DNA of 26,618 nt. It comes from Octopus sinensis (Eukaryota). Under the pieces are notes generated by a model, which worked only from the letters and a program-made list of their open reading frames with translations, had not been told where the DNA came from and searched no databases. The stretch lies in contig NW_021834717.1 in NCBI RefSeq assembly GCF_006345805.1, positions 1 through 26,618 of the forward strand, written 5' to 3'. Made by a program: the position numbers and the translations under genes. Below are positions 1,274 to 23,657 of the stretch, piece by piece (the stretch's first letter is position 1; the number at the start of each line of letters is the position of its first letter).

Positions 1274-1438
1274 TATTCTTTTCTACTCTAGGCACAAGGC
1301 CCTAAATTTTTGGGGAAAGGTCCAGTCGATTAGATCGATCCCAGTACACAACTAGTACTTAATTTATCAACCCCGAAAGGATGAAAGGCAAAGTCGACCT
1401 CGGCGGAATTTGAACTCAGAACGTAATGACAGACGAAA
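1274..1438 (-). mobile_element. SINE family C, 3' monomer fragment
   Basis: Reverse complement contains ACGTTCTGAGTTCAAATTCCGCCGAGGTCGACTTTGCCTTTCATCCTTTCGGGG...CCTTGTGCCTAGAGTAGAAAAG, as in 4072-4476. Confidence 0.85.
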
Positions 1439-3109: not shown

Positions 3110-3163
3110 TATTATTATTATTTGTTGTTATTGTTGTTATTATTATTATTGTTGTTGTTGTTG

Positions 3164-3195
<32 letters not shown>

Positions 3196-3214
3196 CTTAT
3201 CATTATTATTATTG

Positions 3215-3246
<32 letters not shown>

Positions 3247-3266
3247 TATTATTATTATTATTGTTG

Positions 3267-3328
<62 letters not shown>
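3056..3328. repeat. (TTA)n/(TTG)n microsatellite
   Basis: Read directly; explains the poly-L/I ORF 3050-3343. Confidence 0.97.
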
Positions 3329-3330
<2 letters not shown>

Positions 3331-3400
3331 AATAAATGACTGATAACGACGTTATCATCTATATATATGATAACGTCATATATATATAATTAAAAATACA

Positions 3401-3579
3401 CATTTTTGGGGAGAGAGCCAGTCGATTAGACCGACCTCAGTACGTAAATGGTACTTAATTTATCGACCCATAAAGGATAAAAGGCAAAGTCGACCTCGGC
3501 GGAACTCAGAACATAGCGGTAGACAAACTACCGCTAAGCAGTTCGCCCGGCGTGCTAACAATTCTGCCAGCTCGCCGCC
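3401..3579 (-). mobile_element. SINE family C, monomeric copy with tRNA head
   Basis: Reverse complement begins GGCGGCGAGCTGGCAGAATTGTTAGCACGCCGGGCGAA and carries the CCGAGGTCGACTTTGCCTTT core. Confidence 0.85.
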
Positions 3580-3583
3580 CTGT

Positions 3584-3948
3584 TTCTTTTCTATTCTAGG
3601 CACAAGACCCGACATTTTTGGGGAGGGGGTCAGTCGATTAGATCGATCCCAAAAGAATGAAAGACAAAGTCGACCTCGGCGTAATTTGAACTTAGAACGT
3701 AAAGACAGACGAAATACCTATTTCTTTACCACCCACAAGGGGCTAAACATAGAGGCTACAAACAAGGACAGACAAAGGGATTAAGTCGATTACATCGACG
3801 CCAGTGCATAACTGGTACTTAATCTATCGACCCTGAAAGGATGAAAGGTAAAGTCGACCTCGGCGGAATTTGAACTCAGAACGTAACGGCAGACGAAATA
3901 CCGCTAAGCATTTCGCCCGGGTGCTAAAGTTTCTGCCAGCTCACTGCC

Positions 3949-3950
<2 letters not shown>
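3584..3950 (-). mobile_element. SINE family C, dimeric copy
   Basis: Reverse complement of the 4072-4476 copy over almost its whole length, with a deletion of about 32 bp at 3650/3651. Confidence 0.9.
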
Positions 3951-3983
<33 letters not shown>

Positions 3984-4071
3984 CAAACGATGGATATGAA
4001 TACATAGACTCAAATGCACAGCTTAATGTATCAGAATTCCAGACCAGTTAGTTCAGTAGTATATTCACGAG

Positions 4072-4476
4072 AAGGCGGCGAGCTGGCAGAAACGATAGCA
4101 CGCCGGGCGAAATGCTTAGCGGTATTTCTTCTGCCGTTACGTTCTGAGTTCAAATTCCGCCGAGGTCGACTTTGCCTTTCATCCTTTCGGGGTCGATTAA
4201 ATAAGTACCAGTTACGCACTGGGGTCGATGTAATCGACTTAATCCCTTTGTCTGTCCTTGTTTGTCGTCTCTGTGTTTAGCCCCTTGTGGGTAGTAAAGA
4301 AATAGAAATAGGTATTTCGTCTGTCTTTACGTTCTAAGTTCGAATTACGCTGAGGTCGACTTTGCCTTTCATCCCTTCGGCGTCGATAAATTAACTACCA
4401 GTTGCGTACTGGGATTTATCTAATCGACTGGCCCCTTCTCCCAAAATTTCGGGCCTTGTGCCTAGAGAAGAAAAGA
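4072..4476 (+). mobile_element. SINE family C, dimeric copy
   Basis: Head AAGGCGGCGAGCTGGCAGAAACGATAGCAC. Two internal copies of GTTCT(G/A)AGTTC(A/G)AATT(C/A)CGC(C/T)GAGGTCGACTTTGCCTTTCATCC. Tail GGGCCTTGTGCCTAGAGAAGAAAAG. Confidence 0.9.
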
Positions 4477-4624
4477 CTAGTATATCCATTCGGCTATTGC
4501 ATGCAAATATATTCTCGAGGTATACTTATGTTTAAATCCCTCTACAAAATATAATTACTCTGCGAAGGCGTTGTTGGTAGATTTATCAGGGATCAGAGAA
4601 GATCCCTTACGACATTTGGTTGCA

Positions 4625-4760
4625 GACCGTAACTTTCTGAGTTGAAATCACAGAAAAGTAAACTTTCTTTTTCACTCTGCTGAGGTTTATAAAACGAGCT
4701 TGATTTGAGTTTACGGGTCAGTCTAATCTATTAAACTCATCCCACAATTTTTGACTTGGA
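4625..4760 (+). mobile_element. Highly decayed family C-like SINE fragment
   Basis: TTCTGAGTTGAAATC...CTTTCTTTTCA...ATAAAA...TAATCTATTAAACTCATCCCACAATTTTTG aligns by eye to the family C monomer. Confidence 0.45.
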
Positions 4761-4882
4761 GGTTCACCGTTCCAAAAGAAGAATTATTTCATGTTCTCAA
4801 AATTTCTAAATTCTTATGACGTTAACAACAAACGATGCTCGCTGGTAAGAATAAAGTTTCTAAAATAGAGAAATCTGAAGAA

Positions 4883-4945
4883 TTGCTTTGGTTCAATGGT
4901 AGAACGCTAGTCATGTTTACAGATCAAGGTTCCATTCTCCCACAC
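4883..4945 (+). other. Decayed tRNA-like head (A box TGGTTCAATGG, B-box-like GGTTCCATTCT); SINE relic or tRNA pseudogene
   Basis: Box-like motifs at tRNA spacing; no complete cloverleaf. Confidence 0.3.
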
Positions 4946-5344
4946 GCAGCCTTAAACCATTTCCTATTCGAATGCCTTTTTCTAAACCTAGTATAAACAC
5001 ACTATTATTTATAGGTTTATCTGCTTCGAGATTCACCGTTCCCCACCCCCATAAACTATTTTATATTTTTCGATGAGTATTTTGCTGCACGTAATAAACT
5101 GTGAGGCAAATCCCACGAGGCAATGCTGTTTTCTGTTAACGGTAAAAGACAATTTACTTCCTTTTATTCCAAAGTCTTAATGTAGAAAAGGAATTTTATA
5201 AACGTCAGAACAATCTATCTTCATTCAGTTAAAACACAAGTCTTTTATTCCCGGTGAGAGAGAAAGCAATCATTTGTGTTTCTTGCGGAGCTACTGGGCA
5301 ATCATCTTGTCACACATTTGGGTTGGTTATAGCACAGTGTAATT

Positions 5345-5750
5345 TATATTGTGTTATATATACATACATAGATGCCTGTACACATACTTAGACGCATACA
5401 TGCATACATACATAGATAAATGTATACATACATACATGCAAACATAAACACATACATACAAACATAGATGCATGCACACATACATACATGCATACATCTA
5501 TAGATGCATACATGTATACATTTATATAAACACATACGTGCATAAATACAAGCACACACTTAAATACATACAAACTTGCCTACGTAAAACATGCAAATAT
5601 ATATACACGCATACATAATACATAAATACATTCATGCATACATGCATAAATGCGTACACATACGTATATATACATTCAGGCATACATACATACGTACGTA
5701 CATACTTACATACTTGCATACTTACATCTGCGTACATGTATACATATATG
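5345..5750. repeat. Degenerate (CATA/TACA)n low-complexity tract
   Basis: Read directly. Confidence 0.9.
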
Positions 5751-6246: not shown

Positions 6247-6646
6247 ATTCTTTTATTCTTTTATTTGTTTCAGTCATTTGATTGCAGCCATGTTGGAGCA
6301 CCGCCTACTTAGTCGAACAAAGTCACCCAGGACCTATTCTTTGTAAGCCTAGTACTTATTCTCTTTGGCCGAACCACTATGTTACGGGTACGTAAACACA
6401 CCAACATCGGTTGTCAAGCGATGGTGGGGGATAAACACAGACACACACACACACACACATACACACACACACACACATACACACACATATATGATGGGCT
6501 TCTTACAGTTTCCGTTTACGAAATCCACTCACAAGGCTTCGGTCGGCTCGAGGCTATAGTAGAAGACACTTGTCCAAGTTGCCACGCAGTGGGACTGAAT
6601 CCGGAACCATGTGAGTTGTAAGCAAGCTACTTACCATACAGCCACT
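6247..6646 (-). mobile_element. tRNA-derived SINE family B, full length, with internal (TG)n
   Basis: Reverse complement head GTGGCTGTATGGTAAGTAGCTTGCTTACAACTCACATGGTTCCGGATTCAGTCCC; tail GGCGGTGCTCCAACATGGCTGCAATCAAATGACTGAAACAAATAAAAGAATAAAAG. Confidence 0.88.
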
Positions 6647-8352: not shown

Positions 8353-8740
8353 TTATCTTTTATCTTTCATTTGTTTCAGTCATTAGACTGCGCCCATGCT
8401 GGGGCATCTTCTTGAGGAATTTTAGTCGAAAGAATCGACCCCAGTTATTATTGTTTTGTAGAGCCTAGTACTTAGTCTATCGGTTTCTTCTTCCGAACCG
8501 CTAAGTTACGGGGACGTAAACACACCAACACCATTTGGTGGGGGAGAAGCACATACACAAAGATACACACACATACATTTATATACGACGGGCTTCTTTC
8601 ACTTTCCGCCTACCAAATCCACTTACAAGGCTTTAATTGGCCCGAGGGTATAGTAGAAGGCAGTTGCCCAAGGTGCCACGCAGTGGGCTCGAACCCAGAA
8701 CCATATGTTTGGGAAGCAAACTTCGTACCACACAACCTCA
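8353..8740 (-). mobile_element. tRNA-derived SINE family B, full length
   Basis: Same head and tail as 6247-6646 and 15831-16468, with a short internal TG/TA spacer. Confidence 0.85.
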
Positions 8741-11008: not shown

Positions 11009-11093
11009 TATATATATATATATATTATATTATACATATATATATATAAGTAAATAAATAGAGTTGAACGAAGATGTTATTAAAATTCTTTTA

Positions 11094-11176
11094 CTTTCGA
11101 CATATGTTTCGAAGACAACATTGGTTTTATTCCAAAGGAATAAACGGTGTAAAATGCAATCTTCTCATCAGGAAAG
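11094..11176 (-). ncRNA. Type I hammerhead ribozyme, intact core (left arm)
   Basis: Reverse complement: CTTTC-CTGATGA-GAAGA...TCTTC-GAAA-CATATGTC-GAAAG. Confidence 0.88.
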
Positions 11177-11369
11177 AAAGAGAGCCTACCTCAACAACAA
11201 GACAGTATAACAATTACGATGACTGCCTAAATGATAAATAGAACATTATTAAGTATTTAATAACGTCAAATCTACTAACAGTTTTTTAAATACTTAATAA
11301 CGTTCTGTTTATCATGTAGGCAGTTATCGTAATTGTTATAATGTCTTGTTGTTGAGATAGGCTCCCTTT

Positions 11370-11452
11370 CTTTCCTGATGAGAAGATTGCATTTAACACT
11401 GTTCATTCCTTTGGAATAAAACCAATGTTGTCTTCGAAACATATGTCGAAAG
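11370..11452 (+). ncRNA. Type I hammerhead ribozyme, intact core (right arm)
   Basis: Stem I CTTTC(11370-74)/GAAAG(11448-52); CTGATGA 11375-81; stem II GAAGA/TCTTC; GAAA 11436-39; palindromic ACATATGT; GUC triplet 11445-47. Confidence 0.9.
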
Positions 11453-11616
11453 TAAAAGAATTTTAATAACATCTTCCTTCAACTCCATTTATTTACTTAT
11501 ACTACACAAATTACTACACATTAACCCGGAGTTTCTACCTTTGAATAGGTCGCTTCATCCGTGTTACTTGAGTGAATTTTGCTACCCTGGAAACTGTTTA
11601 TTGAATTTTCCATGTT

Positions 11617-15830: not shown

Positions 15831-16468
15831 AGGCGCAGCTGTATGGTAAGAAGCTTGCTTCCCAACCACATGGTTCCGGGCTTAGTCCCACTGTGTGGCA
15901 CCTTGGGCAAGTATCTTCTACTGTAGCCTCGGATCAACCAAGTCCTTGTGAGTGGATTTAGTAGATGGGAACTGAAATAAGCCCATCGAATGCATACATG
16001 CATACATACATACATACATACATGCATACATACATACATACATACGTACATGCATACATACATACATACATACATGCATACATACATACATACATACATA
16101 CATACGTACATGCCTACATACATACATACATACATACATACATACATACATACATACATACTACATACATGCATACATACATACATACATACATACATAC
16201 ATACATGCATACATACATGCATACATACATACATACATATGTGTGTGTGTTTGTGTCTGTGTTTGTTCCTCGCCACCGATCGACAACCGGTGTCGGTGTG
16301 CTAACGTCCCCGTAATTTAGCGATTCGGCGAAACAGACCGATAGAACAAATACTAGTCTTAAAAAGGAAATAAGTCCTCGAGTCGATTCATTCGACTAAA
16401 AATTCCTCAAGGCGGTGCCCCAGCATGGCCGCAGTCGAATGACTGAAACAAGTAAAAGATATAAAAAA
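15831..16468 (+). mobile_element. tRNA-derived SINE family B, full length, with expanded internal (CATA)n
   Basis: Head AGGCGCAGCTGTATGGTAAGAAGCTTGCTTCCCAACCACATGGTTCCGGG; about 270 bp of microsatellite; tail GGCGGTGCCCCAGCATGGCCGCAGTCGAATGACTGAAACAAGTAAAAG. Confidence 0.88.
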
Positions 16469-16839: not shown

Positions 16840-16931
16840 TTTTAGTACAATCGTTTCAATACAAGGACAGGCTTTATTAAAAGTTGTAAAAATTACAGCA
16901 TATAAACGTGTCCCGTACTCATCAGCTAAAA
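16840..16931 (-). ncRNA. Type I hammerhead ribozyme in the sense 3' pLTR
   Basis: Reverse complement: TTTTAG-CTGATGA-GTACGGGACA...TGTCCTTGTAT(T)-GAAA-CGATTGTA-CTAAAA, with one extra T before GAAA. Confidence 0.75.
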
Positions 16932-18377
16932 TACATGTGAGTTCTCTAGACATCCTAGTGGTTGAGGCTATACTCATGAAGTAATGTAGATAATTAGTAA
17001 CATAAACAGATTTCCAAAGTTCATTAAAGTTCTTTAAAGATGATGTACAGTCTTATCACAGAATTTTAAAAAAGTTCTAATAGCATCACAGAGAAGGTGA
17101 CCTAATCAATAGAGCACATATGAATTTCCAGAGATATGATGAGGGATTACATACTCACACAGAAGACAAATTTATCCATTGTTAATCACAACGAGGTGGG
17201 TCTCAATTCCTGCTTATTAGCATTACAGAGAGGGTGAATTAATCCTTTGTATAGATGCACAATTTCCATGGTGTAGATGTAAGTTTCCCGAGAAATGAAG
17301 AGGAATTTCATATTCACAGGCGATAAATTATCAATGGTTGAACACAATGAGGTAGGTATCAAAACTTGTTATATGATTAGGTATTTGCTGCATTAATCAC
17401 ATTACTGCTATTTACAAGAGGCTGTAGCTATTAACTTTTAAAAGCTAAAGGCTGAAGGGCTTTCTAGAGGGCAAGAATAGAAAGGAAGGGAATAGAAGAA
17501 AAGAGAGAAAATAAAGGAGGAGGGAGCAAAAAGGGGGGGGGGAAAGGGGACTAAAAGAGAGAGAAAGGAAAAGAGATAAGAAGAAGAAACAAAAAAGAGA
17601 AAGAGAAAGAAATGGGAAAGAAGGGAAAAATAAAAATAAAAAAGAGGGTTCTAGTTATACAGACGAATTAGTAGACGGCAAGTCTGGTTTTAATTTACAG
17701 GCATCTAGGAACTAGAGAGAATATTATTCTTGGCCAGTAAAACAGCTAATTTATTGCTGTTGAAATCAGCTATGAATTTAAAGAGAATCTAAAGAATAAC
17801 ACAGTCAGGGGTTTAGGGGTCAGATGCTAAAATCAAAGAAAATACATTAGGAAAATCTAAGTATAATCTTATCAAAAAGTCAATAAAACTTACTTATTTA
17901 ATTTATTCATTTTATTGTCTTAAGGAGTTGCCGTTATTATTCATACATTGACGGACTACAGGTCAAATCTTAGAAGATCATTTACAAGGTGTTAGGGGAT
18001 TGTCTATCATAATGAAGATAATCATATTATCACCGAGGGGGTAGCCTATTTATTTAATTTTGAAATAGAATTATTATGGGGCTTAGTACTCATTTTATTT
18101 TATTAGAGTTATGCTACTTAAATTAGATTAAGTTAGGAATTAAAATTAAAATTACAATTAAAATTAAAATTAAGAATTTAAAAATTATGAGTTTGAAATT
18201 AAATAAAGCCTCAATTAAGCAGTGTATAAGTACTATTCATTTCCCTGTTCTCAAAAAACTGATGCAGATATAAGGAAAAAGATAACTGTAGTGTGAGAAC
18301 TCTTAGTTATCTACTTAAAGCAGTGCTATACTAGTAAAATCAAGTTATATCTATCTATCTAGTTACGGATATTCTAA

Positions 18378-19463
18378 TCATTTAAAATATTTTAAAGTCT
18401 TCAATTTAGCGTGGACACAACTTGACCTAGTTCGATATGATTATTCAATAAGTTACTATGTTTTCTATGCTTTAGAATTTCATACGTCTCCATGGAGCAT
18501 AGTTGGCAACCAACCCTACTATTTTTATACGGAATTGCTCTCCTAACTATTCCCAATTAAGGTATAATTTTTTTTATTATTTTTGAGTTCCCAAATTTTG
18601 TTTGAAAAGTGTGGTGGTACCAGCTTTATGACGTAATTTAAAAGACGAGATGTGATTTCTAACTCTGGCTAGAAAATTAATGTACATCCAACGTAAAGAT
18701 ATTTGTTATTCTCCGTGGATATGGTACATTTATAGATACATTATTTTCCCCACATAGACCAGGTTGCCGGGCATTTGATTTTATTCTACACTTACACACA
18801 GGAGGAGCAACTTCAGGCTTTGGATTATTCTTGGGTAGATGTCTTAGGTTCCTATTATTTTGATTATCATTTCTATAGTTGGTGCTGATATCTAAAGTAT
18901 TGCTATTATTTATTGATCCTTCAGCTTCATTATTTAGGTTTAAAGTCCTACCATGATTTCTTATATTATTGGTAATGTTACTATTATTGTTAGTCTTTTT
19001 ATCAGACTGCATATTGCTGTTATAAATATCACTGATATTTTCATTCTCCTTATTTTCTCCATTAGCCTTATATCTATTATTTCTATTATTAACATTATTA
19101 CTTCTATTAATATCGGCATTGTTATTATTACTATTAATGTTAATGTTATTAGTCATTCTGTGGTTACTAATTTCACCTATGTTTTGATAGTTACATTGTT
19201 GTTTTTATTGTTGGTAGCATTATTATAATTGCTATTGGTATTCATGCTGATATTATTATTTTTATTTCTATCTTTCCTGGCTAGTTTAATGTTTTTATTA
19301 TTAATCTTAGCTATTAAAGTGGACATATTTGGGAGGGTTGAATAAGAAATCCTAACTGTTTTCCTAGATATAATTCTATGATATCTATGAGAGATAGGGA
19401 AATTTTTTTCCAGAATTACTTTGAATTTGTTCTGTATATCCGATTGTATCGCACAGTTGAAAG
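18378..19463 (-). pseudogene. PLE ORF 3' part: RT thumb/linker, Asn-rich tract and GIY-YIG endonuclease, broken by 1-nt frameshifts
   Basis: PFNCAIQSDIQNKFKVILEKNFPISHRYHRIISRKTVRISYSTLPNMSTLIAKINNKNI, then an N-rich tract, then CKCRIKSN..QPGLCGENNV/YKCTISTENNKYLYVGCT...RVRNHISSFK...KIWELK...W.IVRRAIPYKNSRVGCQLCSMETYEI...CVHAKLKTLKYFK*. Confidence 0.85.
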
Positions 19464-19548
19464 GGAAATCTGTTTATGTTACTTAATTATCTACATTACT
19501 TCATGAGTATAGCCTCAACCACTAGGATGTCTAGAGAACTCACATGTA

Positions 19549-19639
19549 TTTTAGCTGATGAGTACGGGACACGTTTATATGCTGTAATTTTTACAACTTT
19601 TAATAAAGCCTGTCCTTGTATGAAACGATTGTACTAAAA
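19549..19639 (+). ncRNA. Type I hammerhead ribozyme in the inverted 5' pLTR copy
   Basis: Stem I TTTTAG(19549-54)/CTAAAA(19634-39); CTGATGA 19555-61; stem II GTACGGGACA/TGTCCTTGTAT; GAAA 19622-25; AC-GATT-GT; GUA triplet 19631-33. Confidence 0.85.
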
Positions 19640-21852: not shown

Positions 21853-21928
21853 TCACTCTTGAAACGTCTGAAATCAATCCATCTGTTCCCCGAGGGATTA
21901 TATAATTTCAAGGCTGTGGTTTATAAAG
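21853..21928 (+). CDS. Candidate exon 2 (SLLKRLKSIHLFPEGLYNFKAVVYK)
   Basis: CTTCTATTGCAG| acceptor and AAG|GTGAGA donor; only one frame is open, phase 0 to 1. Confidence 0.4.
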
Positions 21929-22030
21929 GTGAGACTCATTCTCCTTAAAGGTATGTACGAAGACCATGGTAACGATTCACAACCAACAACAACTTCAATT
22001 CAAAGTTATTCAACATATACGGTTTATCAG

Positions 22031-22078
22031 ATCACATAACCAGAAATCTACTCCGTTCTGTCCCCCATTTCGTCTTAG
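22031..22078 (+). CDS. Candidate exon 3 (DHITRNLLRSVPHFVL)
   Basis: TTTATCAG| acceptor and TAG|GTAAGT donor; phase 1 to 1. Confidence 0.38.
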
Positions 22079-22415
22079 GTAAGTAATCCTCTCAGCATAA
22101 CACAAAGCACACTCAACAATGTCATTCTTTATTAACGTAGTGAAAATAAACTCAGCAATTTTTTCAATCGGAGAAACTGCACGTATTCTCCTATCCATCC
22201 AAACCTCTTAACAGGAAGACTGAACTTTTATATTGCTGTCATCTACGGAGTTCACTGCTTATTAATTTGAAGTCATTAGTTGACTTTTACTAAAATTTTT
22301 ACCGAAATTTTACTGAAATCCAGCATAATCATTCTTATATAGTGCGTTAGAGTTCATTATTTACATTATTTACATTTGACGGATATTTGTCCTCATCTTG
22401 TTTGTTGTTAACACA

Positions 22416-22489
22416 CGGGCATATGGCATAGTGGTTAAGAGCGTGGGCTACTAACCCCAAGATTCCGAGTTCGATTCCAGGCAGTGACC
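22416..22489 (+). promoter_or_regulatory. tRNA-derived head with Pol III type 2 internal promoter
   Basis: A box TGGCATAGTGG (22424-34), B box GAGTTCGATTCC (22467-78), anticodon-like hairpin TGGG-CTACTAAC-CCCA. Confidence 0.8.
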
Positions 22490-22520
<31 letters not shown>

Positions 22521-22978
22521 GAGTTTGACAAGCTCAGAAAGAGTTTGACAAGCGAAAGAGTTTGACAAGCTCAGACAAGCGAAAGAGTTTGACAAGCTCA
22601 GAAAATATAAAGACCTACTCATTGAAATTGAGAAAATGTGGCATCTCAAGGCGGTTACAATACCAGTGATCGTAGGAGCACTAGGAATGATCAAGAAGGG
22701 AACCGAAAATTATATGAGAATGATCCCTGGCTTACCATCCCTGCAAGAAGTGCAAAAGATTGTCTTAACTGGTACATTACACGTATTGAGAAGAGCATTG
22801 TCGATGTGAGAACTGTTGCTTCTCATGCATTTTAATTTACTTTAAAAAAAAAAAAAAAGTGAACGAACTACTGAGTTTGGTTTAATAGGCCTACCAATAT
22901 ACACTATGAGTTTCTTTGCCCTAGGAGTCGGGAAGACCCTCGGCAAGAAAGGGAAGAAATTTGAAAGAGAAAAAAAAA

Positions 22979-22979
<1 letters not shown>
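22521..22979 (+). mobile_element. 5'-truncated R4/Dong-type (RLE-encoding) non-LTR retrotransposon inserted in (TAA)n
   Basis: RLE C-terminal coding remnant, 3' UTR and A-rich end, with (TAA)n on both sides (22490-22520 and 22980-23027). Confidence 0.8.
22582..22809 (+). pseudogene. C-terminal 75 aa of a restriction-like endonuclease domain (missed by the ORF track)
   Basis: KEFDKLRKYKDLLIEIEKMWHLKAVTIPVIVGALGMIKKGTENYMRMIPGLPSLQEVQKIVLTGTLHVLRRALSM*, with the KxxKYxDL...W....PVIVGALG and QK..L.GT...LRR motifs. Confidence 0.87.
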
Positions 22980-23014
<35 letters not shown>

Positions 23015-23085
23015 TCAATAATAATAACAACAACAACATCGAAAAATACCTTAGGAATGAGAACCTGGGTTTGAAATTTCCCCAA

Positions 23086-23131
23086 GACACCTGATGAAGG
23101 CTGGAGGGTATATCAGCCGAAACGTTGTGTT
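23086..23131 (+). ncRNA. Minimal type I hammerhead ribozyme
   Basis: Stem I GACAC/GTGTT; CTGATGA 23091-97; extra A; stem II GGCTG/CAGCC; GAAA 23119-22; palindromic ACGT; GUU triplet; predicted cut after 23126. Confidence 0.85.
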
Positions 23132-23469
23132 AACAACAAACAAGATGAGGACAAATATCCGTCAAATGTAAATAATGTACATAATTCCTCATTTCTTAAA
23201 TATAGAACTGTATGGCGTTAGAGTTGTTTCTCATTCAACTGTTGCTAAGCACCATCTAAAAGCCATACAGCTACTATTTCCTTCATATAACCGGAATCAA
23301 TTAAAATGAACAAACTTCACGTACCCTTCTGTCGTCCTTGTATAAAATTCAGGGTTGCCTCACCATTTTGTACTCACATTACTGAACAATCACGCTTGAT
23401 TTCTATGTCTGCAAAACTTTGAATATAGCAGGCTTCAGTTACAAATAGTTGCAACAACCCCACCAACTT

Positions 23470-23571
23470 ATCAATCTCCATCTCTTTTCTCTATCTATCC
23501 ATCCATCCATCTATCCATCGATCTGTCTGTCTCTCTATCCATCCATCCATCCATCCATCCATCCATCCATC

Positions 23572-23657
<86 letters not shown>

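What the first reader, a model, noticed from the sequence alone, without database searches (positions are those of the whole stretch)
22356..23185. tRNA-headed SINE carrying a hammerhead ribozyme, with an inverted terminal arm that starts at the predicted cleavage site
Seen: a Pol III tRNA head (A and B boxes), (TAA)n, a minimal type I HHR (23086-23131) and a tail. A 60-bp inverted copy of that tail (59/60) sits directly in front of the tRNA head, and it corresponds to the sequence from 23126/23127, within 1 nt of the predicted self-cleavage site. With the LINE insert removed, there is no TTTT Pol III terminator between the head and the ribozyme. Known: Penelope-like elements carry minimal type I HHRs with palindromic stem III in their pLTRs and often have inverted 5' pLTR copies, whereas classical SINEs borrow LINE tails. 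Inference: this is a chimeric non-autonomous element, Pol III-transcribed but ribozyme-processed and mobilised by PLE machinery. I cannot confirm whether it has been described.
Basis: partly seen in the sequence, partly recalled or inferred. Interest (0 to 1): 0.85.

Follow-up and report, generated by a model that had tools for sequence, protein, structure and literature searches.

The report
Octopus tRNA-headed SINE with hammerhead tail
This is a young copy of a short, non-autonomous jumping element from an octopus-type genome that begins like a tRNA gene and ends with a small self-cutting RNA motif and tail typical of Penelope-type retroelements. It is a real and neat example, but a variation on kinds of element already described.

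Summary
The window holds a 60-nt inverted repeat (59/60), a tRNA-like head with A and B boxes, a (TAA)n tract split by nested retroposon fragments, and a minimal type I hammerhead with its predicted cut at 23126/7.

I add three features: an 11-bp target-site duplication (22344-54 and 23215-25), a 29-nt extra "tail" at the right end only, and true element limits of 22355-23214.

Related copies were recovered from Octopus bimaculoides proteins and from Logan read assemblies. They carry the same head and the same hammerhead/tail module in the same order in at least four other loci, so the SINE family is real and not a chance juxtaposition.

Four of six informative loci have an inverted partial copy next to the direct copy. 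The 3' ends fall into tailed and tail-less classes. Both are signatures of Penelope-like element (PLE) integration.

The special claim fails as a rule. Inverted copies end at four different places in four loci, and only the window's lies at the cut site.

Ribozyme activity, Pol III transcription and the autonomous PLE partner remain untested.

Closest precedents are the schistosome Sm-alpha/Sj-alpha SINE-like elements, PLE minimal hammerheads and non-LTR retrozymes. My verdict is a new member of a known kind, of moderate interest.

The parts
22344..22354 (.). Left copy of the target-site duplication, GCGTTAGAGTT
   Evidence: Exact 11-nt repeat of 23215-23225 directly flanking the element.
22355..22355 (.). 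Single C between the TSD and the arm (filler or 1 templated nt)
   Evidence: It does not pair with 23186.
22356..22415 (-). Inverted partial copy (arm), the reverse complement of 23126-23185. It ends in two perfect 9-mers, GTAAATAAT GTAAATAAT (tail-less type of 3' end).
   Evidence: 59/60. The mismatch at 22361 matches the A found in 8/8 tail-less ends of relatives.
22417..22489 (+). tRNA-derived head with A box 22424-34 and B box 22468-78. 22416 is a 1-nt junction base.
   Evidence: The same head is found in L015 (twice), L022, L020 (B-box part) and L010 (first 11 nt).
22490..22520 (+). Left part of the expanded internal (TAA)n
   Evidence: Relatives have only 2-3 units here.
22521..22858 (+). 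Nested 5'-truncated LINE-type 3' end. It starts with short tandem repeats, then carries an 86-codon open frame (22549-22806, stop 22807-09), a 3' UTR and A15 (22844-58).
   Evidence: It is absent from other copies of the SINE. The LINE assignment rests on the C-terminal ORF plus poly(A) architecture; no family was assigned.
22859..22979 (+). Second nested A-tailed fragment of unknown family
   Evidence: D3. Absent from other copies.
22980..23040 (+). Right part of (TAA)n and a degenerate TAA/CAA linker
23041..23085 (+). Body upstream of the ribozyme (AAAAATACCTTAGGAATGAGAACC...GAAATTTCCCCAA), conserved in all relatives
23086..23131 (+). Minimal type I hammerhead: helix I 23086-90/23127-31; CUGAUGA 23091-97; bulged A 23098; helix II 23099-23104/23113-18; GAAA 23119-22; ACGU 23122-25; H17 = U 23126. 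Predicted cut at 23126/23127.
   Evidence: The features match the min-HHR description in PMC4209133. Its sequence equals the majority consensus of the relatives.
23127..23185 (+). Post-cleavage segment up to the proximal 3' end, with 9-mers GTAAATAAT (23168-76) and GTACATAAT (23177-85)
   Evidence: Tail-less relatives end here (L009, L015 direct, and P0024, P0033, P0041, P0045, P0080).
23186..23214 (+). 'Tail': a 29-nt extension present only at the right end (TCCTCATTTCTTAAATATAGAACTGTATG)
   Evidence: It is conserved in tailed relatives (L012 both copies, L010 inverted, L020, L023, P0001, P0012, P0014, P0025). It matches the PLE tail described in PMC8557442 and PMC11167929.
23215..23225 (.). 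Right copy of the target-site duplication, GCGTTAGAGTT

Best explanation
**What it is**

The window holds a recently inserted copy of a tRNA-derived SINE family from an octopus-type genome. The ancestral unit is about 235-265 nt. It has four parts in order:
- a tRNA-like head with internal Pol III A and B boxes;
- a short TAA linker;
- a roughly 45-nt body;

That 3' module contains a minimal type I hammerhead, about 59 nt after the cut site, and then a roughly 29-nt tail.

**How it most likely works (inferred)**
- Pol III transcribes from the head through the module, which has no internal T4 stop.
- A PLE reverse transcriptase/GIY-YIG endonuclease, supplied in trans, recognises the 3' module.
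- The enzyme cuts both target strands with an 11-bp stagger and primes cDNA from both 3' ends, as shown in vitro for the Anolis PLE.
- The bottom strand started at the distal site (23214) and copied the whole SINE RNA to its 5' end (22416/7).
- The top strand started at the proximal site (equivalent to 23185) and stopped after 60 nt.
- The two cDNAs were joined head to head.

This accounts for the 60-nt inverted arm, the tail at one end only, and the TSD.

**Role of the hammerhead**

The hammerhead travels as part of the borrowed PLE module. Its core is intact in the family consensus and in this young copy. Cleavage would detach the head from the priming sites, so full-length copies must come from uncleaved RNA.

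**The cut-site coincidence**

The match between the arm's inner end and the cut site is either chance or an occasional run-off on a cleaved RNA. It is not a rule.

**Later events**

The internal (TAA)n expanded after insertion and received two nested retroposon fragments.
For: **Shown**
- Anatomy.
- Minimal-hammerhead features (bulged base after A9, G10.1-C11.1 pair, ACGU palindrome, long helix II, 5-bp helix I) match PMC4209133.
- The family exists. P0001 from O. bimaculoides is 85% identical, and 19 close plus about 100 more distant ORFs turned up among 1.84 billion representatives.
- Head plus module occur in the same order in L015 (two copies), L022, L020 and L010. Both are also fused in the gene model XP_052825882.1.
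- An inverted copy lies next to the direct copy in the window, L010, L012 and L015, that is, in 4 of 6 loci with upstream sequence.
- There are two classes of 3' end, about 25-29 nt apart. These match the PLE tail and the two RT start sites of PMC8557442 and PMC11167929.
- The window arm and its direct copy are 98% identical, against 75-82% in the other loci, and the TSD is perfect. This is a young insertion.
- A distant relative (L014) shows an inverted copy plus three tandem 129-nt hammerhead units, another PLE-type arrangement.

**Inferred**
- Pol III transcription.
- Trans-mobilisation by a PLE.
- The order of the priming events.
Against: - No autonomous PLE with this hammerhead and tail was retrieved. 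There is no PLE coding sequence in the window or in any fetched locus.
- The head scores poorly with tRNA models.
- Rfam's hammerhead models do not report the motif.
- Published minimal PLE hammerheads cleave weakly and only as dimers or with protein help. Activity here is unknown.
- Only about seven independent related loci could be read, all short contigs from unnamed samples.
- Copy number in the genome is unknown.
Confidence: 0.75

Rival explanations
1. The 60-nt arm is a run-off cDNA made on the 3' product of hammerhead self-cleavage, so its inner end marks in-vivo cleavage at 23126/7.
For: - The arm's inner end (22415 pairing with 23126) lies within 1 nt of the predicted cut.
- The cut-site rule agrees with the experimentally mapped Anolis PLE site.
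- A cleaved 3' fragment would still carry both priming sites.
Against: - The other inverted copies end 13 nt downstream (L010), 33 nt upstream (L012) and near the 5' end of the head (L015).
- In the distant relative L014, the junction lies in helix II.
- A hit within +-1 nt has a chance probability of about 1.3% for a single junction, and about 5% for at least one hit among the four junctions read.
- The boundary is ambiguous by 1-4 nt, because CG at 22416-17 can also be aligned with 23123-24.
- RNA-seq of the Anolis PLE showed no reads ending at the cut site, and cleavage was dispensable for insertion in vitro.
Confidence: 0.2
2. Chance juxtaposition. An ordinary tRNA-SINE ending in (TAA)n landed inside or next to an older PLE fragment that already had inverted ends.
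For: - The (TAA)n between head and module could pass for a SINE tail.
- Two loci (L012, L023) carry the module with no head found.
Against: - Head and module are contiguous, with only about 15 nt between them and the same order and spacing, in L015 (two copies), L022 and L020.
- The TSD brackets the whole unit.
Confidence: 0.03
3. A MITE or TIR DNA transposon, with 60-bp terminal inverted repeats and an 11-bp TSD (Mutator-like).
For: Long near-perfect inverted ends and a TSD of a length seen in MULEs.
Against: - The ends are asymmetric: 29 extra nt lie between the right repeat and the TSD.
- Relatives have arms of very different lengths, or none.
- Relatives also occur in head-to-tail tandems.
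Confidence: 0.02
4. The SINE is moved by an ordinary LINE. The hammerhead-like motif is a non-functional relic, and the inverted copies arise by twin priming.
For: - No PLE partner was found.
- Octopus genomes are rich in RTE, CR1 and Dong-R4 LINEs.
- Most old copies have a decayed core.
Against: - Twin priming inverts the 5' part of one copy. Here the 3' end is duplicated in inverted orientation.
- The dimorphism of 3' ends and the min-HHR with all accessory features are PLE hallmarks.
- There is no poly(A) or LINE-type microsatellite at the 3' end.
Confidence: 0.08

Closest known systems
Sm-alpha / Sj-alpha SINE-like retroposons of Schistosoma (Ferbeyre et al. 1998; Laha et al. 2000; as described in PMC2770079 and PMC6765202)
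   Same: A tRNA-derived head (tRNA-Gln in Sm-alpha) with a Pol III promoter, followed by a type I hammerhead. High-copy and non-autonomous.
   Different: - The schistosome ribozyme is a canonical, efficient hammerhead, and the elements are often in tandem arrays. Here the motif is the minimal PLE type with a 2-bp palindromic helix III.
- Copies here are dispersed and carry PLE insertion signatures (inverted copy, tail).
- Different phylum. Sequence relatedness was not tested.
Minimal hammerheads in pseudo-LTRs of Penelope-like elements (Cervera & de la Pena 2014, PMC4209133; Lunse et al. 2017; Frangieh et al. 2024, PMC11167929)
   Same: - The same motif architecture: bulge after A9, G10.1-C11.1, ACGU, and a cut after GAAACGUH.
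- Priming sites tens of nt downstream of the cut.
- A tail of about 30 nt, inverted 5'-truncated copies, and paired motifs on opposite strands 100-700 bp apart.
   Different: No RT/GIY-YIG ORF. The 5' part is a tRNA-like Pol III head instead of PLE sequence.
Non-LTR retrozymes of animals (Cervera & de la Pena 2020, PMC7229834; Li et al. 2026 bioRxiv 10.64898/2026.07.22.740005)
   Same: Non-autonomous, hammerhead-bearing, and proposed to be derivatives of PLE pseudo-LTRs moved by PLE enzymes. The distant relatives in L014 are tandem 129-nt units of this type.
   Different: Retrozymes are defined as tandem repeats of roughly 170-400 nt with canonical type I motifs that yield circular RNAs, and no tRNA head is described. 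The window copy is a single dispersed unit with one ribozyme.
Octopus tRNA-derived SINEs OK, OR1 and OR2 (Ohshima & Okada 1994; SINEBase)
   Same: tRNA-derived SINEs of octopus. From memory, the head resembles tRNA-Arg ('R' families). This is a lead only.
   Different: OR2 is reported as a CORE-SINE, and no CORE-like segment is seen here. Identity with OR1 or OK cannot be excluded. I found no report of a hammerhead in them.

Membership tests
tRNA-derived SINE (SINE2) | Internal Pol III A and B boxes at tRNA-like spacing in the 5' head | tested here: met
   TGGCATAGTGG at 22424-34 and (A)GTTCGATTCC at 22468-78, 45 nt start to start.
tRNA-derived SINE (SINE2) | Head recognisable as tRNA by trained models | tested here: inconclusive
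   Rfam tRNA gives 14.5 bits (threshold 29, E = 9.1). ARAGORN finds none. Degenerate heads are usual in SINEs.
tRNA-derived SINE (SINE2) | Dispersed copies sharing the same head-body-tail order, flanked by TSDs | tested here: met
   Copies in L015 (two), L022, L020 and L010. 11-bp TSD in the window.
tRNA-derived SINE (SINE2) | 3' part shared with an autonomous partner element | not testable with these tools
   No octopus genome or PLE/LINE library was reachable. DNA scans and look-ups were exhausted.
tRNA-derived SINE (SINE2) | Transcription by RNA polymerase III | not testable with these tools
   Needs an experiment. There is no T4 stop inside the ancestral unit.
Hammerhead ribozyme, minimal type I (PLE type) | Conserved boxes CUGANGA and GAAA, with U16.1-H17 before the cut | tested here: met
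   23091-97, 23119-22 and U23125-U23126. Unique in the window, 0.01 expected.
Hammerhead ribozyme, minimal type I (PLE type) | Helices I and II formed by flanking sequence | tested here: met
   Both are in the MFE fold, -13.6 kcal/mol, z = -2.0.
Hammerhead ribozyme, minimal type I (PLE type) | Accessory traits of PLE min-HHRs: unpaired base between A9 and G10.1, G10.1-C11.1 pair, palindromic 15.2-16.2 | tested here: met
   A23098; G23099-C23118; ACGU at 23122-25. Compared with PMC4209133.
Hammerhead ribozyme, minimal type I (PLE type) | Score above threshold with the Rfam hammerhead covariance models | tested here: not met
   No hammerhead match at gathering score, nor at E <= 10. This is expected for motifs lacking a helix III hairpin, but it is still a failed test.
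Hammerhead ribozyme, minimal type I (PLE type) | Self-cleavage | not testable with these tools
   Needs in vitro or in vivo assays.
PLE-dependent non-autonomous element | Inverted 5'-truncated copy abutting the 5' end of the insertion | tested here: met
   Window, L010, L012 and L015. Feature as described in PMC8557442.
PLE-dependent non-autonomous element | Optional 30-40-bp tail at one end, giving two alternative 3' ends | tested here: met
   29-nt tail at 23186-23214 at the right end only. Relatives are tailed or tail-less. Compare PMC11167929.
PLE-dependent non-autonomous element | Sequence identity of the module to the pseudo-LTR of an RT/GIY-YIG-encoding PLE of the same genome | not tested
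   No partner could be fetched. tblastn with Poseidon_Ac found nothing in the held DNA.
Non-LTR retrozyme | Head-to-tail tandem repeats, each with a hammerhead, able to give unit-length circles | tested here: not met
   There is a single ribozyme in the window element. Tandem units are seen only in the distant relative L014.
TIR DNA transposon / MITE | Symmetric terminal inverted repeats directly abutting the TSD in all copies | tested here: not met
   29 nt separate the right repeat from the TSD. Arm lengths differ or arms are absent in relatives.

The most novel reading that the evidence does not exclude
**First part.** In this young insertion, the 60-nt inverted arm is a run-off cDNA of the 3' product of hammerhead cleavage. 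That would make it a genomic footprint of in-vivo ribozyme cutting during PLE-type retrotransposition.

**Second part.** Tail-less 3' ends are made by telomerase-like reiterative copying of a 9-nt template (GUAAAUAAU) by the PLE reverse transcriptase at its internal start site. The second 9-mer has A at its fourth base in 8 of 8 tail-less ends, including the window arm. It has C in 8 of 12 tailed ends (Fisher p = 0.0014).
Probability: 0.15. Interest if true: 0.7.

Novelty: new member of a known kind. Interest (0 to 1): 0.4.

Why it matters
SINEs are normally described as parasites of LINEs. A tRNA-headed SINE family that instead carries the ribozyme and priming module of Penelope-like elements would show that PLEs also support Pol III-driven SINEs.

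- Octopus genomes are unusually SINE-rich, and most SINE families there are unclassified.
- Such a family, with many dated copies, gives a natural data set on three open points of PLE biology: whether the hammerhead cuts in vivo, where reverse transcription starts, and how inverted copies form. These are currently known from one in vitro system.
- The practical value is modest: better annotation of cephalopod repeats and of exonised copies in gene models.

Tried and rejected
- **Rfam**, all families, at gathering score and at E <= 10: no hammerhead, and only a weak tRNA match.
- **ARAGORN** on the window and on the loci: nothing.
- **Self-comparison** of the window: no second copy of head or module.
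- **Exact-protein look-ups** of window ORFs: not on record. P0001 is also not on record.
- **Exact DNA pattern scans** of the metagenome, genome and viral collections:
  - The tail 22-mer found nothing.
  - The hammerhead pattern hit only GC-rich metagenome and Paenibacillus DNA. Only L001 was read, and it is unrelated to the element.
- **Protein search with the reverse-complement head plus arm peptide:** no candidate. The window's head/arm junction is therefore not a recurrent, inherited junction in that database.
- **Profile search with 19 relatives:** only 13 hits, with no new named species.
- **P0016 locus:** the gene spans 132 kb, so no DNA was returned.
- **P0042 and P0086** from the representative search are false positives (a repeat protein and an EGF-like protein).
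- **tblastn with the Anolis Poseidon_Ac protein** against the window and loci: nothing.
- **L014:** the RT ORF in this locus looks by eye like a LINE (RTE-like) rather than a PLE. The Pfam scan of it failed, so this rests on reading the translation alone.
- **Supplement of PMC8557442:** not held. The Lunse 2017 and Ferbeyre 1998 papers are not held either.
- **Ideas considered and dropped:** MITE, chance juxtaposition, and an arm that extends into a helix III hairpin. GTTG...CAAC pairs, but it cannot close on A15.1-U16.1.
Full report
**1. What is in the sequence**

Reading 21900-23600 and the repeat finder confirm a 60-nt inverted repeat, 22356-22415 against 23126-23185, with 59 of 60 positions complementary.

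The right arm begins at T23126. Just upstream lies a hammerhead-like motif:
- CTGATGA at 23091-97;
- an unpaired A at 23098;
- a 5-6-bp helix II (23099-23104 with 23113-18);
- GAAA at 23119-22;
- the palindrome ACGT at 23122-25;
- U at 23126.

The five bases before the core (23086-90) pair with the five after 23126. The core pattern occurs once in the window, against 0.01 expected. Helices I and II are both in the minimum-energy fold, with z = -2.0 against shuffles.

Applying the rule "cut after GAAAC-G-U-H" places the cut at 23126/7. The hammerhead of the Anolis PLE Poseidon_Ac is cut at the same position, after GAAACGTC, 26 nt past its start codon.

Right of the left arm there is a tRNA-like segment. 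Its A box (22424-34) and B box (22468-78) have the spacing of a tRNA gene. Trained models barely recognise it: Rfam tRNA gives 14.5 bits, and ARAGORN finds nothing.

Rfam reports no hammerhead family even at E <= 10. This is expected for motifs without a helix III hairpin, but it is still a failed test.

Three things were not in the finding:
- The unit is flanked by a perfect 11-bp direct repeat, GCGTTAGAGTT (22344-54 and 23215-25).
- The right end runs 29 nt beyond the inverted repeat (23186-23214) before the duplication. The left arm abuts the duplication with one extra C.
- The stretch 22521-22979 is made of two A-tailed retroposon fragments. The first has an 86-codon C-terminal ORF, a stop and A15. 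Both sit inside an expanded (TAA)n.

With those fragments removed there is no TTTT anywhere between the head and the 3' end.

**2. Where the window comes from and whether the element is a family**

The window is extremely rich in microsatellites and SINE-like repeats.

The frame that stays open through the ribozyme and tail (23075-23218) found one protein in the 5.8-billion-cluster database. It is an uncharacterised 51-aa ORF of Octopus bimaculoides, 85% identical.

An exhaustive phmmer scan of 1.84 billion representatives gave 120 hits. About 19 are close relatives. Their consensus is (G)MRTQVRNFPKTPDEGWRVYQPKRCVNNKQDEDKYPSNVNNV... About 100 belong to a more distant family...QTPEEGRRTYRPKRCGNNNKDEDNSPKTLNDKNHQASSQKFRQ, which is often repeated every 43 residues.

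One close relative is the N-terminus of a RefSeq model. XP_052825882.1, "dystrobrevin beta isoform X1" of O. bimaculoides, starts MPMGIWHSG-EGWRVYQPKCCVNNKQDEDKYPS. GIWHSG is the translation of the head (GGCATATGGCATAGTGG), and the rest is the ribozyme and tail. Its DNA could not be fetched because the gene spans 132 kb.

The other close relatives come from Logan assemblies of runs SRR11869384 to SRR11869394. I could read seven independent loci.

**3. Head and ribozyme tail belong together**

I mapped the three parts of the window element onto these loci with blastn, MAFFT and an nhmmer profile.
- **L015** has two nearly full copies head to head. Each has head, about 15 nt of TAA-like linker, body, hammerhead and a 3' end.
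- **L022** has head (cut by the contig start), linker, body and hammerhead.
- **L020** has the B-box part of the head followed by body, hammerhead and tail.
- **L010** has the first 11 nt of the head (GGGCATATGGC), an AT-rich stretch, then body, hammerhead and 3' end.
- **L009** starts in the (AAT)n linker.
- **L012 and L023** carry the body, hammerhead and tail, with no head found.

So the head and the hammerhead/tail module are one element, about 235-265 nt in its ancestral form. The "chance juxtaposition" rival is rejected.

The majority consensus of the relatives over the ribozyme is identical to the window copy. Most other copies have lost core positions, often at CpG sites. This is what is expected of a family whose source copies keep an intact core and whose dispersed copies decay.

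**4. [quoted passage not shown]

Craig et al. (PMC8557442) describe PLE insertions as 5'-truncated and often preceded by an inverted 5'-truncated copy. They also have a 30-40-bp "tail" present at only one end.

Frangieh et al. (PMC11167929) showed three things for the Anolis PLE protein. It cuts and extends both DNA strands. Reverse transcription starts at two adjacent internal sites downstream of the hammerhead. The tail is the stretch between those sites.

The SINE shows all of this:
- Four of the six loci with enough upstream sequence have an inverted copy next to the direct one: the window, L010, L012 and L015 have one, and L020 and L023 do not.
- The 3' ends fall into two classes. Tail-less ends stop right after two 9-mers (...GTAAATAAT GTAAATAAT). 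Tailed ends continue for about 25-29 nt (...TCCTCATTTCTTAAATATAGAACT...).
- In the window, the direct copy is tailed and the inverted arm is tail-less. This is exactly the "tail at one end" picture.

The geometry fits priming from both 3' ends of an 11-bp staggered cut:
- The top-strand end ...GCGTTAGAGTT-3' is followed by the cDNA-sense arm.
- The bottom-strand end is followed by the complement of the full SINE.
- The two cDNAs meet at 22415-22417, one base from tRNA position +1.

The minimal hammerhead also carries every accessory trait that Cervera and de la Pena list for PLE motifs. They also noted pairs of such motifs on opposite strands 100-700 bp apart.

The distant family adds a further PLE-type arrangement. 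L014 carries an inverted copy followed by three tandem 129-nt units, each with a CTGAAGA...GAAACGTTG core (only the second unit matched the strict pattern CTGANGA-N(8-45)-GAAAC; the third reads CAAAAC where GAAAC is expected). The inverted/direct junction lies in helix II at a CCGG microhomology.

Between the two families, the fourth pair of helix II differs on both sides: U-A in octopus and C-G in the other family. That is consistent with the helix being kept. Within families, however, the variation is explained by CpG decay, so I do not count it as proof.

**5. The claim about the cleavage site**

In profile coordinates the cut lies between 168 and 169. The inner ends of the inverted copies are:
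- 168 in the window;
- 181 in L010, followed by 17 nt of unrelated filler before the head;
- 135 in L012, inside the CUGAUGA box;
- about 4 in L015, which is almost full length.

The boundary therefore varies, as expected for 5' truncation.

A single junction falling within +-1 nt of the cut has a chance probability of about 1.3%. The chance of at least one such hit among the four junctions read is about 5%.

The window boundary is itself uncertain by 1-4 nt, because CG at 22416-17 can also be aligned to 23123-24 with a 1-nt gap.

It remains possible that this particular arm was copied from a cleaved RNA. I put that at about 0.2.

One point from the anatomy bears on "ribozyme-processed". Both 3' ends lie downstream of the cut, so cleavage separates the Pol III head from the part that is primed. 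Full-length SINE copies must therefore derive from uncleaved RNA, and cleaved RNA can only give headless fragments. The ribozyme is thus more likely a passenger of the borrowed PLE module, or a recognition structure, than a maturation device for the SINE. In the Anolis system cleavage needed the protein and was dispensable for insertion.

**6. An unexpected detail**

The one mismatch between the arms (22361 against 23180) is not random.

The fourth base of the second 9-mer is A in all 8 tail-less ends: the window arm, L009, L015 direct, P0024, P0033, P0041, P0045 and P0080. It is C in 8 of 12 tailed ends (Fisher p = 0.0014). Part of this count is inferred from protein sequences.

Tail-less ends thus finish with a perfect repeat of the preceding 9-mer GTAAATAAT. 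Some copies have three units (P0009/L012, P0082, P0092/L023).

This would fit reiterative copying or slippage at the internal start site by an RT related to telomerase. The sample is small, and subfamily structure is an alternative.

**7. Comparison with what is known**

tRNA-derived, Pol III-type SINE-like elements with a hammerhead have been known since 1998 in schistosomes. Sm-alpha is derived from tRNA-Gln, and Sj-alpha is its counterpart. Those carry a canonical, efficient ribozyme and are often tandem.

Minimal hammerheads are a hallmark of PLE pseudo-LTRs. Animal non-LTR retrozymes have recently been argued to be non-autonomous derivatives of PLEs.

I found no paper describing a hammerhead in an octopus SINE, or a tRNA-headed SINE with a PLE tail. 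Octopus vulgaris is reported to have 893 recently active "unclassified SINE" families and 30 recently active Penelope families.

I could not consult Repbase, Dfam or SINEBase. The classical octopus SINEs OK, OR1 and OR2 may include this family. OR2 is a CORE-SINE and looks different.

**8. Verdict**

The SINE with a hammerhead and the PLE-type mobilisation are supported by anatomy and by independent copies. The cleavage-site-defined arm is not supported as a rule.
- Ribozyme activity, Pol III transcription and the partner PLE are untested.

I classify it as a new member of a known kind, with moderate interest (0.4). Confidence in the main explanation is 0.75.

Noticed in passing
window 16859-16996 and 19484-19621: A 138-nt inverted repeat, 100% complementary, with arms 2487 nt apart (I4). 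It looks like a very young TIR DNA transposon or a palindromic assembly feature. The ORF between the arms (18677-19156) is low-complexity and N-rich.
   Followed up: no
window 11045-11263 and 11283-11501: 219-nt arms, 94% complementary, separated by only 19 nt (I1). This is a long hairpin or foldback/MITE-like element.
   Followed up: no
window 1274-1438, 3718-3920, 4103-4305, 4315-4479; and 6493-6642, 8583-8734, 15838-15987: At least two other short interspersed repeat families occur in several copies and orientations (I2, I3, I7, I13; spurious ORFs). The window is a dense mosaic of SINE-like repeats and microsatellites.
   Followed up: no
P0016 = XP_052825882.1 (O. bimaculoides, GCA_001194135.2): The first 33 residues of the 'dystrobrevin beta isoform X1' model are the translation of this SINE's head fused to its hammerhead/tail. 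An exonised SINE copy appears to supply the predicted N-terminus.
   Followed up: partly
L014:10090-10520 (ENA ERZ21867824, contig ctg122172l) and about 100 proteins: - A distant relative of the module forms 129-nt head-to-tail units with an inverted copy in front.
- More than 30 ORFs of this family start with ...ANGIRTGDPRGF. This back-translates to the reverse complement of a tRNA T-arm/B box (GGTTCGAATCC), at a fixed distance upstream of the hammerhead.
- So an oppositely oriented tRNA-like piece seems to be a fixed neighbour there. The organism is unknown.
   Followed up: partly
window 22350-22356; L009:175-185: After tail-less ends the next bases are GAAC(T) in the window arm, in L009 and in P0033 (3 of 8). 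These are the same as the last conserved bases of the full tail (...ATAGAACT). This may reflect a jump from the distal to the proximal start site, or microhomology with the target. It is unexplained.
   Followed up: partly
L001-L008: The pattern CCTGATGANGGCTGGAGG-N(5-9)-CAGCNGAAA also occurs in four Paenibacillus genomes and four metagenome contigs. Only L001 was read, and it is GC-rich and unrelated to the octopus element. It may be a bacterial hammerhead or a coding coincidence.
   Followed up: no
L012, L013, L014, L020, L021: The gene calls on these eukaryotic contigs do not translate to the listed proteins with table 11. In L012 a TGA is read as W, and in L014 table 4 leaves only the terminal stop in the neighbouring RT ORF (3162-5564), against 8 with the standard code. 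L020/L021 were not checked. This looks like an artefact of automatic code choice, not biology.
   Followed up: partly
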